A DNA stretch of 64,000 nt, taken from the sequence record MT612989.1, one strand, 5' to 3'. A model generated the notes under the pieces. The model was not told the origin of the DNA. It did no database searches and saw only the letters and a program-made list of their open reading frames with translations. This document shows, in pieces, positions 2,595-25,373 of this stretch (its first letter is position 1; the number at the start of each line of letters is the position of its first letter). A program made the translations under genes and the position numbers.

Positions 2595-3410
2595 TTATAA
2601 ACCGTGAGATTTTTTGAAAGTGTCTAGACGCTTTTCGATTGTGTGAGCTTCTAGTTCAATAATGATGTACCAATCTTTGTATTTACCACGCTGTTCAAAT
2701 GACACTGACTTACAACCTTTGTGAGTAGTATTCATTACGATTTCTGCGATTGCGTCACGAGCAGCTTGACCACGTGCGTTTACTTTCTTAGCAGGCTTAG
2801 GCGCTTCAGCTTTCGGTGCAGGTGCTGCTACAGGTTCAACTGCTTTAGTATTTTCAGCTTTCTTAGCTTCGTGATCTGCTTTGATAGCGTTGAATGTTGA
2901 TGTTGCAACGCAACGAAGTTGACCTTCAGTTTCAGCTTTACGACCTTTCAAGTATAGAGCCTTGATATGTACTGGTTGAAAACGCTTAGTCAAACGATCC
3001 ATTTTCTGAACTACTTCAAGTTCACCTTGAGCGTTTTCGAAGAAAACAACGTACTTGCTATCTACAGCATCAGGGTTAGATACAGTTGAGCAACGCTTTG
3101 CATCGCCACCTAGTTGACGGTGTACACGCTTCCAGATAGCACCGTGACCACGTTCGTTGTAATCAGTGTAAGCAATCGCATGAGCCATTTCGTGAGTGAT
3201 TGTGTTGATTTGCTCTTCTTTAGTACGAGCGTTCAAGAATTCTTCAGAAATACGTAGCGTTTTAGTACGGTAGTTACAATCACCTAGTGCAGCTTTACGT
3301 TTTGAAAATTCAAATGACCAACCTTCTGCAATCAGATCGCGCTTCATCAAGTTGTTACCAGACATAAGGTCGATTGCGATAGCTTTCATTTCTGCTTTAG
3401 TGATTTTCAT
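2595..3410 (-). CDS. SprT-like zinc metalloprotease
   Basis: HEMAH zincin motif followed by HG..W; LGxC..RTKTLRIS upstream. Confidence 0.8.
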   Translation of the reverse strand: MKITKAEMKAIAIDLMSGNNLMKRDLIAEGWSFEFSKRKAALGDCNYRTKTLRISEEFLNARTKEEQINTITHEMAHAIAYTDYNERGHGAIWKRVHRQLGGDAKRCSTVSNPDAVDSKYVVFFENAQGELEVVQKMDRLTKRFQPVHIKALYLKGRKAETEGQLRCVATSTFNAIKADHEAKKAENTKAVEPVAAPAPKAEAPKPAKKVNARGQAARDAIAEIVMNTTHKGCKSVSFEQRGKYKDWYIIIELEAHTIEKRLDTFKKSHGL

Positions 3411-18844: not shown

Positions 18845-19230
18845 AGAGTATTCAACACATCAACAATTTGAATTTTTTCAACAGTGTGAAATCCGTATTC
18901 ACAGTAAGGCATTTGTTCAGAAATGAACTGAATATCATCTTCACTGAACTCAGGGTATACTTCTGAGTTCGGACGCTCTTGACATTCGCCTTCTGTCCAA
19001 CTCGCCAGAGAATCACCAGAAAGATGTACGAGCGTTTCAAATCGCTCAACTTCTTCACTCGATGCCGGTTTCAAATCGCCAACGTAATCACCATCATTGG
19101 TGTCAACTTCTACGTAAATATGTAACGCCATTACAAATTCCTCATTATTGTGCCTATTAAAGCGAAAACAATCGCCGAGATGAACAATACAACCCACCCA
19201 GCGACTGTATGACCCGAAATGATGAGCCAT
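18841..19230 (-). CDS. hypothetical protein
   Basis: probable start MALHIYVEVDTNDGD near 19131. Confidence 0.6.
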   Translation of the reverse strand: MAHHFGSYSRWVGCIVHLGDCFRFNRHNNEEFVMALHIYVEVDTNDGDYVGDLKPASSEEVERFETLVHLSGDSLASWTEGECQERPNSEVYPEFSEDDIQFISEQMPYCEYGFHTVEKIQIVDVLNTL

Positions 19231-19361
19231 GCACCGAAGATAAGCCCGCCAACTGACAATCCGAGAATAACCAACATTGCGACGATACCGAACGCAATCA
19301 ATGTCAACAACCCCGTTACGAACTCACCTAAGTTCATGTTACTCACCAATTTCAAAGTCAA
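19131..19361 (-). CDS. small membrane protein
   Basis: two long hydrophobic helices. Confidence 0.6.
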   Translation of the reverse strand: MTLKLVSNMNLGEFVTGLLTLIAFGIVAMLVILGLSVGGLIFGAWLIISGHTVAGWVVLFISAIVFALIGTIMRNL

Positions 19362-19533
19362 AAAGATAGTGAATCTTGCCGTCAGTTAGCGAATCGCCGA
19401 TGAGCGGGTCGTTAGCTGCAACAACTTTGCTGTACGGAAGTTTGATAAGCTCACCGTCGATTGTGTCAATTCGCTCAATTACAATGATCGGCGTACCTGT
19501 TTTCAGTTCAAAATAATCTGTTTTACTAATCAC
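19339..19533 (-). CDS. hypothetical protein
   Basis: ATGA overlap with td. Confidence 0.55.
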   Translation of the reverse strand: MISKTDYFELKTGTPIIVIERIDTIDGELIKLPYSKVVAANDPLIGDSLTDGKIHYLFDFEIGE

Positions 19534-20432
19534 GACATTTTACCTTTTAGGGTTGGGTATGGGTCATAGTCATATACGCGAAAATCACTTGCGCGTTTAG
19601 TTAACAACTGTGACAACGTTTCAAATTCAGGAAGTTCAATCTGAGGTAGCGCACGCGGCGTACGTCTCATTTGCTTCATTACTTGTATTAGATGATCTTC
19701 ATAAATGTGAACATCACCACCAGAGAAAATCAATTCACCGACACCTAAGCCAGTCAATTTAGCTAGTATATGCACTAGCAAAGCATACGATGCGATATTG
19801 AACGGTAGACCTAAGAATGTGTCAACTGAACGCTGATTCCATTTCAAGCTGATCTTACCATTACGCACGAACACTTGAAAGCCGTAATGACATGGCGGTA
19901 GAGCTACGTCAACTGAGTTACTTTCAGTATGGAAGTACGGGTCCCATGCTTCAACAAGCATACGACGTTGCGCACTTTGCGTCGGGTCTTCATTAACCGC
20001 TGCAATATCGCACAGCAATTGATGAATCTGGTCAAACTCAACAATTTCTCGCTCTGCATTTACAGATAGACGTTTACGCCACACTTTGCCATAGACATAA
20101 CCAAGGTCGTCTTCATTGCGAACAATACCTGCTTCTTTCGCACGCTCGTTCAGCTCGTCGAGATTTTGTTGCCAGATACAGAAATCTTCGTCTGATAATT
20201 CAGTGTATTTTCTCAGTTCAGAAATCGAACCTGAACCGCTCAAGAACCATAGCAACTCACCGAAAATAGCTCTTGTCGCCATTTTCTTAGTCGTTAGCAA
20301 CGGGAAACCTTTTTCTAAGTCCCATCGAAGCTCACGCGAAACAACACTAACAGTATTCGTGCCTGTTCTATTCTCAAGAAAATCACCATTTTCTAGAATA
20401 TCTTTACAAAGTTCCAAGTAGTTTTTCATCAA
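19530..20432 (-). CDS. td: thymidylate synthase (ThyA type)
   Basis: NRTGT, PLLTTKK, ELLWFL, LPPCH, QRSVDTFLGLPFNIASY, GDVHIY. Confidence 0.97.
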   Translation of the reverse strand: MMKNYLELCKDILENGDFLENRTGTNTVSVVSRELRWDLEKGFPLLTTKKMATRAIFGELLWFLSGSGSISELRKYTELSDEDFCIWQQNLDELNERAKEAGIVRNEDDLGYVYGKVWRKRLSVNAEREIVEFDQIHQLLCDIAAVNEDPTQSAQRRMLVEAWDPYFHTESNSVDVALPPCHYGFQVFVRNGKISLKWNQRSVDTFLGLPFNIASYALLVHILAKLTGLGVGELIFSGGDVHIYEDHLIQVMKQMRRTPRALPQIELPEFETLSQLLTKRASDFRVYDYDPYPTLKGKMS

Positions 20433-20438
20433 TTACCT

Positions 20439-20642
20439 TTAAAAATCATCGTCCCATACTGCTTGCACGGGAGTACATTGCATCAACTGACCGTCAATTT
20501 CATAAGTCTCTGATTGCGGTTGAGTACTGTAAGATGTAGGTTGTTCAGCCCCAAACAACGTACCAGCAGCTACCGACGCTAGAATCCCTAGAATCGCAAT
20601 CAAAACAATCAATTCGATCAGAGTAAAACCTTTAGATTTCAT
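20439..20642 (-). CDS. small protein with prepilin-type N-terminal cleavage/methylation motif
   Basis: MKSKG|FTLIELIVLIAILGILASVA: class III signal peptide with Gly-1, Phe+1, Glu+5. Confidence 0.85.
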   Translation of the reverse strand: MKSKGFTLIELIVLIAILGILASVAAGTLFGAEQPTSYSTQPQSETYEIDGQLMQCTPVQAVWDDDF

Positions 20643-20678
20643 AATATTACACTCACAAAGTTAGTTAATAAACAGTTT

Positions 20679-20909
20679 TTACGGCAGTTTGCTCGTTTTG
20701 CGTGCTTGCTTTGCCGTTTCAGGTAGTTTCACTTCAAAGTGCTCTGCTTGTGAAACGTACAATACGCGCTCTGCAAGTAATTCACCGTTCTCGTAAACAG
20801 TCGTAATGAATTCAGGACCAGAAGAGCTATTTTTAACATCAACACCTGGTTTTGTCATTAGCTCTTCAAAGCGAGTCGCAGTAGTCAATTTAAGATTTAA
20901 GTTATCCAT
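20679..20909 (-). CDS. hypothetical protein
   Basis: 76 aa ORF in operon. Confidence 0.6.
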   Translation of the reverse strand: MDNLNLKLTTATRFEELMTKPGVDVKNSSSGPEFITTVYENGELLAERVLYVSQAEHFEVKLPETAKQARKTSKLP

Positions 20910-24893: not shown

Positions 24894-25373
24894 TTATTCG
24901 AAATGTCTGAACTTCTTCAGCTTTTTCTTTTTCTTTTTCTTACCGATAGTTTCAGGACCTGCATTAGTTACAGCACCAGTCGTTTCACCAGAAGCAATCG
25001 ACTCTGGTGAGCTACTACCGTCACCCGCATCACCTGCAACAACAGCTTCTTCGACTCGAATACACTCTTTCGCGAAATCTTCAGATAACCCGTATTCTTT
25101 TGCAAGCTCAATCAGCAACAAATAAGACGCGCCATAATCAAGTGCTGTTTTACCACCTGGTAATGCACCAACCATGCGCTTGATATTTCTCACAGTAACA
25201 TGAAACATCGTCCAGTTACTTTTCTCTTGTGCAGTTACAGGGTCACGCAACTTCTTACCATCTGCGTCGATGATACCCATTCGATATGCTTCCCAACGTT
25301 CAAAACGAAGATGAAGCAAACGAGACAGACGAAGAGCATAAAAACCATCTGCACCACGTTTAGCTACACTCAT
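24894..25373 (-). CDS. T4 gp30.3-like conserved protein
   Basis: F..WEAY..GIID.DG..L...TxQEK...T.FH..V.NIKR; acidic then basic tail. Confidence 0.7.
   Translation of the reverse strand: MSVAKRGADGFYALRLSRLLHLRFERWEAYRMGIIDADGKKLRDPVTAQEKSNWTMFHVTVRNIKRMVGALPGGKTALDYGASYLLLIELAKEYGLSEDFAKECIRVEEAVVAGDAGDGSSSPESIASGETTGAVTNAGPETIGKKKKKKKLKKFRHFE

What the first reader, a model, noticed from the sequence alone, without database searches (positions are those of the whole stretch)
20439..20642. Phage-encoded mini type IV pilin (prepilin signal plus short acidic tail)
Seen: MKSKG|FTLIELIVLIAILGILASVAAG is a canonical class III signal (Gly-1, Phe+1, Glu+5, ~20 hydrophobic residues), followed by only ~40 polar/acidic residues with no globular pilin head. 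Established: such N-termini are processed by prepilin peptidase PilD and enter T4P/T2SS assembly. Inference: a poison pilin or PilD decoy that shuts down MSHA, competence or T2SS pili, giving exclusion of pilus-dependent phages or altered host adhesion and secretion.
Basis: partly seen in the sequence, partly recalled or inferred. Interest (0 to 1): 0.72.

Follow-up and report, generated by a model that had tools for sequence, protein, structure and literature searches.

The report
Truncated pilin-like gene of Vibrio phage
A small, strongly conserved early-region gene of a KVP40-type Vibrio phage encodes a pilin look-alike that keeps only the cleavage signal and membrane helix of bacterial pilus subunits plus a short invariant hairpin; it probably enters and disturbs the host's pilus or secretion machinery, but that is untested, and its pilin-like signal was already annotated in databases.

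Summary
Window 20439-20642 (-) is a 67-aa ORF in Vibrio phage vB_ValM_R11Z, a KVP40-like T4-type phage. It carries a textbook prepilin (class III) signal that scores above the curated Pfam and NCBIfam cut-offs, and it has no pilin head domain. It is the only such ORF in the window and in the whole KVP40 genome.

The gene is present at the same slot, just upstream of td, in 46 Vibrio phage records. It is under purifying selection (dN/dS 0.06-0.23). No bacterial full-length homologue was found.

It is a 13-residue block (Y47-V59) with no amino-acid change in the eight A1 sequences despite near-saturated synonymous change. That block is predicted, at low confidence, to be a beta-hairpin with one invariant Cys.

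This pattern argues against a mere PilD decoy. It favours a pilin mimic that engages a specific periplasmic partner. Function is unproven.

Precedent exists: a 2026 paper describes prophage FimU mimics and notes truncated about 60-residue PilA-like proteins in virulent phages, with the same hypotheses. Databases already label the KVP40 orthologue as prepilin-type.

Verdict: real gene, plausible interpretation, new member of a known kind, moderate interest.

The parts
20439..20642 (-). Whole CDS (67 codons plus TAA stop). It is vBValMR11Z_145, orthologue of KVP40.0030, and belongs to PHROG 13280.
20628..20642 (-). Leader peptide M1-G5 (two Lys, Gly at -1). The predicted prepilin-peptidase cleavage site lies after G5.
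   Evidence: Sequence. K4 and G5 are invariant in 9/9 sequences. PF07963 and TIGR02532 score above their cut-offs.
20556..20627 (-). Pilin alpha1N-type hydrophobic helix F6-L29 (mature F1, E5, G14).
   Evidence: F6, T7, L8, E10 and G19 are invariant in 9/9. AF2 gives a helix at 8-29 here and at 9-30 in a 52%-identical relative. PDB profile hits to geopilin, MshA, PilA and PulG are confined to this part.
20505..20555 (-). Variable Thr/Ser/Gln/Pro-rich linker F30-T46, predicted to be disordered.
   Evidence: dN is 0.28-0.82 here, against 0.03-0.10 in the helix. The lowest mean AF2 pLDDT falls in the linker and the C-terminal tail.
20466..20504 (-). Invariant periplasmic block Y47-V59, a predicted beta-hairpin (strands 45-49 and 52-56, turn at D50-G51) with a single Cys, C56.
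   Evidence: Identical in all 8 sequences of A1. G51, C56 and T57 are invariant in 9/9 of the wider set. dN=0 with up to 6 of 7.7 synonymous sites changed. The hairpin appears in two independent AF2 runs, at low confidence.
20442..20465 (-). C-terminal tail Q60-F67 ending in WDDDF. It is not conserved across the family.
   Evidence: Present in 5 of 13 distinct sequences and absent in the nt-1, CZ01, VS1, QD01, P0003, P0006, P0032 and P0031 types.
20643..20678 (-). 36-nt gap to the upstream gene, with a weak Shine-Dalgarno-like GTGAGTG (20650-20656) 7 nt before the ATG. There is no convincing promoter of its own.
   Evidence: In relatives the gap is 4-10 nt or the genes overlap, which implies co-transcription.
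20679..20909 (-). Context: the conserved 76-aa upstream neighbour (PHROG 14360, function unknown, no signal peptide).
   Evidence: A 75-78-aa ORF sits directly upstream in all T4-type relatives.
19530..20429 (-). Context: thymidylate synthase td, which starts 9 nt downstream of the mini-pilin stop codon.

Best explanation
The gene encodes a pilin mimic reduced to the parts that give access to the host's type IV filament machinery. It is made from the early/replication gene cluster of a lytic KVP40-type phage. The protein inserts in the inner membrane with its short basic leader in the cytoplasm. The host prepilin peptidase cleaves it after G5 (and N-methylates F1), leaving a roughly 6.7-kDa alpha1N-only 'pilin'. 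Its invariant E5 and G14 let it dock where real pilins or pseudopilins dock, at the assembly platform or a growing filament. A flexible linker presents an invariant Cys-bearing beta-hairpin in the periplasm to a conserved Vibrio partner. Because it lacks the globular head that forms the filament shell, the most likely outcome is dominant interference with assembly or dynamics of type IV pili (MSHA, competence) and/or the T2SS pseudopilus during infection. A plausible benefit is exclusion of pilus-dependent competitor phages. What is shown: the gene is real, the signal is canonical, the conservation pattern holds, and the context is phage-only and early-region. What is inferred: processing, docking, interference and the benefit.
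For: The class III signal scores above curated cut-offs, and all 9 family members hit PF07963. The invariant columns are exactly those that matter for pilin processing and assembly (K-2, G-1, F1, T2, L3, E5, G14), plus G51, C56 and T57. Whole-gene dN/dS is 0.06-0.23, and the hairpin block has dN=0 while synonymous sites are near saturation. The gene is present at the same slot in 46 Vibrio phage records and in further uncultured T4-type contigs, and a relative lies between the RNA-polymerase subunit genes of an N4-like phage. No bacterial full-length homologue was found among 1.84e9 representatives or in GTDB genomes, so this is a phage-specific invention and not a captured host pilin. The phage has no prepilin peptidase or pilus machinery of its own and has only this one class III ORF. 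The gene sits among rnh, 32, 41, 61, dut, dexA, td and 39, i.e. pre-replicative genes. Literature supports the logic. Glu5 drives subunit docking (PMC10191384). Phage FimU mimics enter pili and block phages, and truncated about 60-residue PilA-like proteins occur in virulent phages (PMC12952977). Overexpressing minor pilins or changing pilin stoichiometry alters pilus behaviour in V. cholerae (PMC13249403). KVP40 itself uses OmpK, while other vibriophages use MSHA or T4P (PMC13609209).
Against: There is no experimental datum on expression, processing or phenotype for any family member; literature searches found none. The structure models have low confidence (pLDDT 64-66), and fold searches returned nothing. 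The partner of the hairpin is unknown. N-terminal similarity does not discriminate MSHA, PilA-type pili and T2SS. E5 and G14 are general features of the N_methyl domain, so their retention may partly reflect ancestry. A lytic phage that shuts off its host may gain little from blocking pili. T2SS loss is known to stress the Vibrio envelope (my knowledge, not tested here), which could cost the phage.
Confidence: 0.45

Rival explanations
1. Pilus-unrelated envelope effector. The class III signal is just a compact way to obtain an N-in/C-out membrane anchor. The tethered hairpin acts on something else in the periplasm or inner membrane, for example blocking genome entry of superinfecting relatives (T4 Imm-like) or regulating lysis timing (T4 RI-like antiholin binding the holin's periplasmic domain).
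For: T4-type phages carry several small early membrane proteins with such roles (my knowledge). No imm, sp or rI gene is named in the KVP40 annotation, so those roles are unassigned there. The hairpin's absolute conservation would also fit a phage-encoded partner that co-evolves slowly. A second small membrane protein lies nearby, at 19131-19337.
Against: A plain signal anchor would not need G-1, F+1, E+5 and G14 to be invariant in 9/9 sequences, including an N4-like phage copy. A charged Glu in a transmembrane helix is costly unless it is used. Pfam and PHROG scans at E<=10 gave only pilin-type hits and no Imm, Sp or RI family. The KVP40 gp5 is annotated as lacking the lysozyme domain, which removes the target of an Sp-like role. 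The relative in an unrelated N4-like phage argues against a partner specific to T4-type virions or holins.
Confidence: 0.2
2. Benign incorporation or masking. The mini-pilin is assembled into otherwise functional host pili (or at their tip) and changes their surface, so that competitor phages can no longer bind. This is the P-FimU logic and does not shut the machinery down.
For: P-FimU proteins are incorporated without loss of pilus function and block tip-binding phages. The same paper suggests truncated phage PilA could incorporate while lacking phage-binding sites (PMC12952977). E5 and G14 conservation fits true incorporation.
Against: With no alpha1C or beta-sheet head, the protein cannot contribute to the filament's outer shell. 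P-FimU proteins are full-length minor pilins expressed at host-like levels from prophages, whereas this is an early gene of a lytic phage. A masking role predicts diversification of the exposed part under phage-versus-phage conflict, yet the exposed hairpin is invariant.
Confidence: 0.15
3. Pure prepilin-peptidase decoy. An abundant substrate or pseudo-substrate saturates the single Vibrio prepilin peptidase, so that all pilins and pseudopilins stay unprocessed.
For: The leader and cleavage site are perfectly conserved. Vibrio uses one peptidase for MSHA, PilA-type pili and T2SS (my knowledge), so a decoy would be pleiotropic.
Against: A decoy needs only the leader, G-1 and a helix. That does not explain dN=0 over the 13-residue periplasmic block, nor the invariant G51, C56 and T57 in distant relatives. 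Already-processed pilin pools would persist through a short lytic cycle.
Confidence: 0.08
4. A chance ORF or decaying remnant with no function.
For: It is very short and is annotated 'hypothetical' in most records.
Against: It keeps a conserved syntenic position in 46 phage records and further contigs. dN/dS is 0.06-0.23, HMM scores exceed curated cut-offs, and the reading frame is intact in every relative examined.
Confidence: 0.01

Closest known systems
Truncated PilA-like proteins (about 60 N-terminal residues) of virulent Pseudomonas phages, noted by Sztanko et al., Cell Rep 2026 (PMC12952977)
   Same: Both are phage-encoded, from non-temperate phages, with a class III signal plus alpha1N only and no head domain. 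The same two hypotheses apply (incorporation without binding sites, or inhibition of assembly). Neither has been tested experimentally.
   Different: The host genus and phage lineage differ. Sequence relationship could not be checked because their Table S3 is not held. The Vibrio family adds an invariant Cys-bearing hairpin block, which is not a truncation product of any pilin found here.
Prophage P-FimU minor-pilin mimics of F10-like Pseudomonas phages (PMC12952977)
   Same: These are phage-encoded type IV pilin-like proteins that use the host machinery and serve phage-versus-phage competition.
   Different: P-FimU proteins are full-length, FimU-fold minor pilins with extra loops, expressed from prophages at host-like levels, and they preserve pilus function. 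The present protein has no head, sits in a lytic phage, and its exposed part is invariant rather than diversified.
Geobacter PilA-N / 'geopilin domain 1' (PDB 7tgg, 9egp, 2m7g/6vk9)
   Same: These are the best solved-structure matches (E 5e-12 to 4e-9). Both are naturally truncated pilins of about 61 mature residues.
   Different: The match covers only residues 2-42. Geopilin is a bacterial gene that works with a separately encoded PilA-C partner (my knowledge). Here the downstream gene is td, and the helix is predicted to end at residue 29, followed by a linker and hairpin.
Pilins PilA1/PilA2 of archaeal virus SNJ2 (PMC12426801)
   Same: These are virus-encoded pilins assembled by host machinery.
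   Different: They are full pilins of a temperate archaeal virus that become the dominant functional pili. Nothing suggests the 62-residue Vibrio phage peptide can form a pilus shell.
Phage inhibitors of type IV filaments: Aqs1/Tip (bind PilB) and Pf4 proteins acting on PilC (PMC13436744, PMC11436027)
   Same: The proposed outcome is the same: switching off type IV pili, and possibly the T2SS, to exclude competitors.
   Different: Those inhibitors are not pilin-like and act on the ATPase or platform. The present protein would act from within the pilin pathway or the periplasm. No sequence similarity was found.
T4 Imm, Sp and RI small early envelope proteins
   Same: All are small proteins of T4-type phages made before lysis and located in the envelope (my knowledge).
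   Different: No family hit was returned. Those proteins have no class III signal. KVP40 gp5 is annotated as lacking the lysozyme domain that Sp targets.

Membership tests
Prepilin-type (class III signal) proteins: Pfam PF07963 N_methyl / NCBIfam TIGR02532 | HMM score above the curated cut-off | tested here: met
   PF07963 scores 30.3 bits against 21.2. TIGR02532 scores 26.6 against 16.3. All 9 family members match.
Prepilin-type (class III signal) proteins | Short basic leader ending in Gly(-1), then Phe(+1) and Glu(+5), followed by about 20 hydrophobic residues | tested here: met
   The leader M1-G5 is followed by F6 and E10. GRAVY is 2.3 over mature residues 1-23. These columns are invariant in 9/9 sequences.
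Prepilin-type (class III signal) proteins | Cleavage and N-methylation by the prepilin peptidase | not testable with these tools
   This needs protein chemistry. The phage encodes no peptidase of its own.
Bona fide type IV pilins / T2SS pseudopilins (e.g. Pfam Pilin, TIGR01710 GspG) | Globular head: alpha1C packed on a 4-5-stranded antiparallel sheet | tested here: not met
   Only 38 residues follow the helix. GspG scores 27.8 bits against a cut-off of 88.85 and matches positions 1-33 of 134 only. PDB hits stop at about residue 42. AF2 shows only a two-stranded hairpin.
Bona fide type IVa pilins | C-terminal disulfide-bonded D-region (two Cys) | tested here: not met
   There is a single Cys (C56) in 12 of 13 family sequences.
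Bona fide pilins / pseudopilins | Encoded with, or in a genome that has, the assembly machinery (ATPase, platform, peptidase) | tested here: not met
   None is annotated in the whole KVP40 genome, which has only one class III ORF.
Flp/Tad (type IVc) mini-pilins | Flp-type motif and family HMM match | tested here: not met
   The Pfam scan at E<=10 returned only N_methyl, Arch_flagellin (0.17) and DUF4330 (0.23), with no Flp family.
Geopilin-type truncated pilins (PilA-N) | Mature length of about 60 residues with pilin alpha1N | tested here: met
   The mature protein is 62 residues. The best PDB matches are 7tgg, 9egp and 2m7g.
Geopilin-type truncated pilins (PilA-N) | Continuous long alpha1 helix, and an adjacent gene for the complementary PilA-C half | tested here: not met
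   The helix is predicted to end at residue 29 and the linker contains Gly and Pro. The neighbours are td and a 76-aa cytoplasmic ORF.
Phage-encoded pilin mimics (P-FimU / truncated P-PilA; PMC12952977) | Phage-encoded protein with a pilin N-terminus that depends on host machinery | tested here: met
Phage-encoded pilin mimics | Structural similarity of the head to a host minor or major pilin (P-FimU type) | tested here: not met
   There is no head domain. Fold searches against PDB and BFVD gave nothing.
Phage-encoded pilin mimics | Incorporation into pili, or inhibition of pili, and protection from pilus-dependent phages | not testable with these tools
   No published data were found for this family.
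Known anti-phage defence proteins (PADLOC-DB) | Match to a defence-system model | tested here: not met
   0 families at E<=0.01

The most novel reading that the evidence does not exclude
The invariant Cys-bearing beta-hairpin, held near the membrane by a pilin alpha1N and a flexible linker, may be a specific 'key' for the initiation step of type IV filaments. It could act as an in-trans beta-strand donor or competitor at the minor-pilin (PilK/GspK-PilJ) licensing interface recently described (PMC13533445). Alternatively it could act as a disulfide trap for host pilins. Either would let one 62-residue peptide jam or re-programme both pili and the T2SS in many Vibrio species. Together with the unrelated mini-pilin families seen in other phage contigs, this would define a new mechanistic class of phage effectors that act from inside the pilin pathway.
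Probability: 0.1. Interest if true: 0.75.

Novelty: new member of a known kind. Interest (0 to 1): 0.42.

Why it matters
KVP40-type phages are broad-host-range vibriophages that are often isolated from aquaculture settings. Type IV pili and the T2SS are central to Vibrio adhesion, DNA uptake, secretion and phage susceptibility. A conserved early phage peptide that enters the pilin pathway would be a compact natural probe of how type IV filaments are initiated. It would also add a lytic-phage, pilin-pathway example to the known phage strategies against pili, which so far target the ATPase or platform or replace a minor pilin. The conservation map given here (leader, E5, G14, invariant hairpin with one Cys, dispensable acidic tail) narrows the question from 'hypothetical protein' to a specific, checkable model. 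If the protein turns out to be pilus-unrelated, it would still show that a class III signal can be reused as a general phage membrane-targeting device.

Tried and rejected
1. Acidic tail as the functional element: rejected. WDDDF is absent in 8 of 13 distinct sequences.

2. Bacterial origin or host homologue with the hairpin block: not found in 1.84e9 representatives, in GTDB genomes, or in six-frame scans of all 183 fetched loci. The best bacterial N-terminal match is an orphan 183-aa pilin next to asd in a Vibrio, matching through the helix only.

3. Identifying the target system from N-terminal similarity: inconclusive, because MshA, PilA and PulG all match.

4. Fold searches of the AF2 model against PDB and BFVD: nothing at E<=0.001. 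This is expected for a low-confidence 67-residue model.

5. A terminator-like hairpin overlapping the tail codons: not supported, with folding z-score -0.75.

6. Own promoter: the only candidate overlaps the start codon, and relatives have a 4-10 nt gap or overlapping genes.

7. Defence-system (PADLOC) and Rfam matches: none.

8. tblastn with the first 30 residues alone: no output, because of low-complexity masking.

9. The KVP40 genome paper by DOI, and Table S3 of PMC12952977: not held.

10. Expression or virion-proteome data for KVP40-type phages: none found.

11. A loose pattern hit in another KVP40 ORF is absent from the R11Z orthologue and was treated as chance.

I also wrote a degenerate per-column pattern of the C-terminal block in notebook entry 2 and used regular expressions in scripts purely as search aids.

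Full report
OBSERVATION. Window 20439-20642 on the minus strand is an ATG-initiated ORF of 67 codons plus a TAA stop. The product begins with a five-residue basic leader ending in Gly. This is followed by Phe, then Glu four residues later, then a strongly hydrophobic stretch (GRAVY 2.3 over mature residues 1-23). It scores above the curated thresholds of Pfam N_methyl (PF07963: E=2.7e-7, 30.3 bits against 21.2) and NCBIfam TIGR02532 (26.6 against 16.3). Matches to full pilin or pseudopilin models such as GspG and GspH cover only the first 33 or so positions and fall far below their cut-offs. A six-frame scan for the signal finds one hit in the 64-kb window. It finds one hydrophobic hit in the entire 244.8-kb KVP40 genome.

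WHAT THE WINDOW IS. The region is 100% identical to Vibrio phage vB_ValM_R11Z (MT612989.1; window coordinate = record coordinate minus 62000). It is about 88% identical to KVP40, placing it in the family Straboviridae, genus Schizotequatrovirus. The gene is vBValMR11Z_145, the orthologue of KVP40.0030, whose 2003 annotation already notes a match to the Pfam pilin family. UniRef names the orthologue 'Prepilin-type N-terminal cleavage/methylation domain-containing protein'. One record (phage 6E35.1a) calls it 'type IV pilus biogenesis protein', and QD01 notes 'PilE'. A ValKK3 paper mentions weak similarity of ORF231 to PilE (PMC13142089). It belongs to PHROG 13280, function unknown. The pilin-like N-terminus is thus already on record, but the function is not.

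CONTEXT. The gene lies 9 nt upstream of thymidylate synthase and 36 nt downstream of a conserved 76-aa ORF. It sits in the long co-oriented cluster rnh-59-32-frd-uvsX-41-nrdDG-61-dut-dexA-...-td-...-39-30. By analogy with T4 these are pre-replicative genes; that step is an inference. No promoter of its own is evident. In relatives the upstream gap is 4-10 nt or the genes overlap. The KVP40 genome has no annotated prepilin peptidase, pilus ATPase or platform gene, so any processing must be done by the host.

DISTRIBUTION. tblastn finds the gene in 28 KVP40-like and nt-1-like records at E<=0.01. At E<=10 it also finds 18 Vibrio crassostreae (oyster) phages, giving 46 records, all Vibrio phages. 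The 5.8-billion-protein word search finds three clusters. An exhaustive profile search of 1.84 billion representatives returns 15,801 hits, nearly all through the pilin helix only. It also returns a few full-length relatives (P0005, P0006, P0010, P0032, P0031). Four of these are encoded in exactly the same slot (dut - dexA - small ORFs - 'hydrolase' - 75-78-aa ORF - mini-pilin - td) of large T4-type contigs. P0031 lies between the two RNA-polymerase-II subunit genes of an N4-like phage contig. A scan of one genome per GTDB species finds 290 N-terminal look-alikes but no full-length relative. The closest is an orphan 183-aa pilin next to asd in a Vibrio, 85% identical over residues 1-26 only. 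The family is therefore phage-specific.

CONSERVATION. Eight sequences spanning Schizotequatrovirus and Mylasvirus were aligned. M1-L11, G19, several helix positions and the whole block Y47-V59 are identical in all of them. In the nine-sequence set that adds the distant relatives, the invariant columns are M1, K4, G5, F6, T7, L8, E10, G19 (mature G14), G51, C56 and T57. Pairwise dN/dS for the whole gene is 0.06-0.23. In the 13-residue block there is no non-synonymous change, while up to 6 of 7.7 synonymous sites differ. The linker (residues 30-46) evolves fast, with dN 0.28-0.82. The terminal WDDDF is present in only 5 of 13 distinct sequences, although the periplasmic part is net acidic throughout: 3-8 Asp/Glu, and no Lys/Arg in 10 of 13. 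The conserved element is the block with the single Cys.

STRUCTURE. AlphaFold2 was run with the family alignment. It predicts a helix at 8-29, an unstructured linker and a two-stranded hairpin at 45-49/52-56 with the turn at D50-G51 (mean pLDDT 66.5). An independent run with a 52%-identical relative as the target gives the same layout: helix 9-30, strands 46-48/51-53 (pLDDT 64.1). An invariant Gly preceded by Asp, Asn or Gln at the turn fits a tight beta-turn. Confidence is low, and Foldseek against PDB and BFVD finds nothing. A profile search of PDB sequences matches only the N-terminal helix. The best matches are the naturally truncated Geobacter 'geopilin domain 1' proteins (E 5e-12 to 4e-9). 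These are followed by MshA, PilA, other type IV pilins and PulG.

MECHANISM. Established knowledge from the review PMC10191384: class III signals are cleaved by the prepilin peptidase at the cytoplasmic face, and the new N-terminus is often methylated. Glu5 pairs with the N-terminal amine of the neighbouring subunit and is thought to drive docking into the growing filament. Filaments start from a minor-pilin tip complex.

The phage protein keeps every residue needed for these steps and nothing that builds the filament shell. It also adds an invariant periplasmic hairpin. The simplest reading is a pilin mimic that reaches the assembly site and, through the hairpin, holds on to a conserved host component, thereby disturbing assembly or dynamics.

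The strict conservation of E5, G14 and the hairpin argues against a mere peptidase decoy. The invariance of the exposed part argues against a P-FimU-style 'masking' role, which is expected to diversify. A pilus-unrelated role as a tethered periplasmic effector (Imm- or RI-like) cannot be excluded. It is disfavoured by the cost of keeping a charged Glu and the exact pilin signature, and by the presence of a relative in an N4-like phage.

KVP40 adsorbs to OmpK, whereas other vibriophages use MSHA or other type IV pili (PMC13609209). Any exclusion would therefore be aimed at competitors, not at self.

COMPARISON WITH THE LITERATURE. Known phage inhibitors of type IV filaments are not pilin-like and act on PilB or PilC (PMC11436027, PMC13436744). 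Sztanko et al. (Cell Rep 2026, PMC12952977) showed that prophage FimU mimics are incorporated at the pilus tip and block tip-binding phages. They also reported, without experiments, four groups of PilA-like proteins in phage genomes. One group is a family of about 60-residue truncated PilA in six virulent Pseudomonas phages, for which they proposed either incorporation or inhibition of assembly. Their table is not held, so I cannot tell whether the Vibrio family is among the four. An archaeal virus encodes full, functional pilins (PMC12426801).

In IMG/VR, 148 viral stretches encode class III-signal proteins. Of the best 80, 22 are 90 aa or shorter, with unrelated tails, including another recurrent two-Cys family. 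A 52-aa example sits in the early region of a 102-kb phage contig. Phage mini-pilins are thus a recurrent theme. The present family is one well-conserved, uncharacterised member with its own distinctive hairpin.

VERDICT. On novelty, this is a new member of a known kind. Interest is moderate. It offers a sharp, testable model in an important phage group, but it is not surprising to specialists after the 2026 precedent, and the pilin-like annotation is two decades old.

DECLARED SLIPS. See Tried and rejected. These are short sequences recalled from memory in private reasoning only and never used, and a degenerate search pattern written in a note and in scripts.

Noticed in passing
window 19131-19337 (-): A 68-aa ORF that is almost entirely hydrophobic (likely 2-3 membrane helices; PHROG 17378, function unknown). 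It lies four genes downstream of the mini-pilin and is conserved in KVP40 (KVP40.0033). It is another small early membrane protein.
   Followed up: partly
window 24894-25373 (-) (L001:9895-10374): The R11Z record annotates a 159-aa ORF between primase and helicase as 'major capsid protein'. The KVP40 orthologue (KVP40.0019) is hypothetical, and the real gp23 lies elsewhere (KVP40.0363). This is probably a mis-annotation.
   Followed up: no
L016:6222-8099: In the distant T4-type relative carrying P0032, td is split into two pieces by an I-TevI-like GIY-YIG homing-endonuclease gene, as in the T4 td intron. ValKK3 also carries a homing-endonuclease insertion in this 5-kb region (H10).
   Followed up: no
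L022, L031, L032 (IMG/VR loci, match at 3001 onward): A second recurrent family of phage mini-pilins (76-82 aa) has a different conserved two-Cys tail and is unrelated to the KVP40-type block.
   Followed up: no
L024 and L078 (IMG/VR contigs of 222 and 225 kb): ORFs of only 27-29 aa consist of a two-residue leader plus a pilin alpha1N helix and nothing else. They could be real micro-proteins, decayed genes or chance ORFs.
   Followed up: no
L015:2114-4888: The P0031 relative sits among tiny ORFs between the two subunit genes of an N4-like RNA polymerase II. This points to transfer of the mini-pilin between unrelated marine phage lineages.
   Followed up: partly
L099:3001-3552: A Vibrio sp. genome has an orphan 183-aa pilin next to asd and a phosphate-binding-protein gene, outside any pilus operon. 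It is the closest bacterial N-terminal match to the phage protein (85% over 26 residues).
   Followed up: partly
L186:42497-43762 (KVP40 gene 5): The KVP40 baseplate hub gp5 is annotated as lacking the lysozyme domain of T4 gp5. A separate SLT transglycosylase (KVP40.0279.1) is encoded elsewhere.
   Followed up: no
window 20452-20472 (-): A terminator-like stem-loop plus T-run overlaps the codons of the WDDDF tail just before td. Its folding energy is not different from shuffled sequence (z = -0.75), so it is probably not meaningful.
   Followed up: yes
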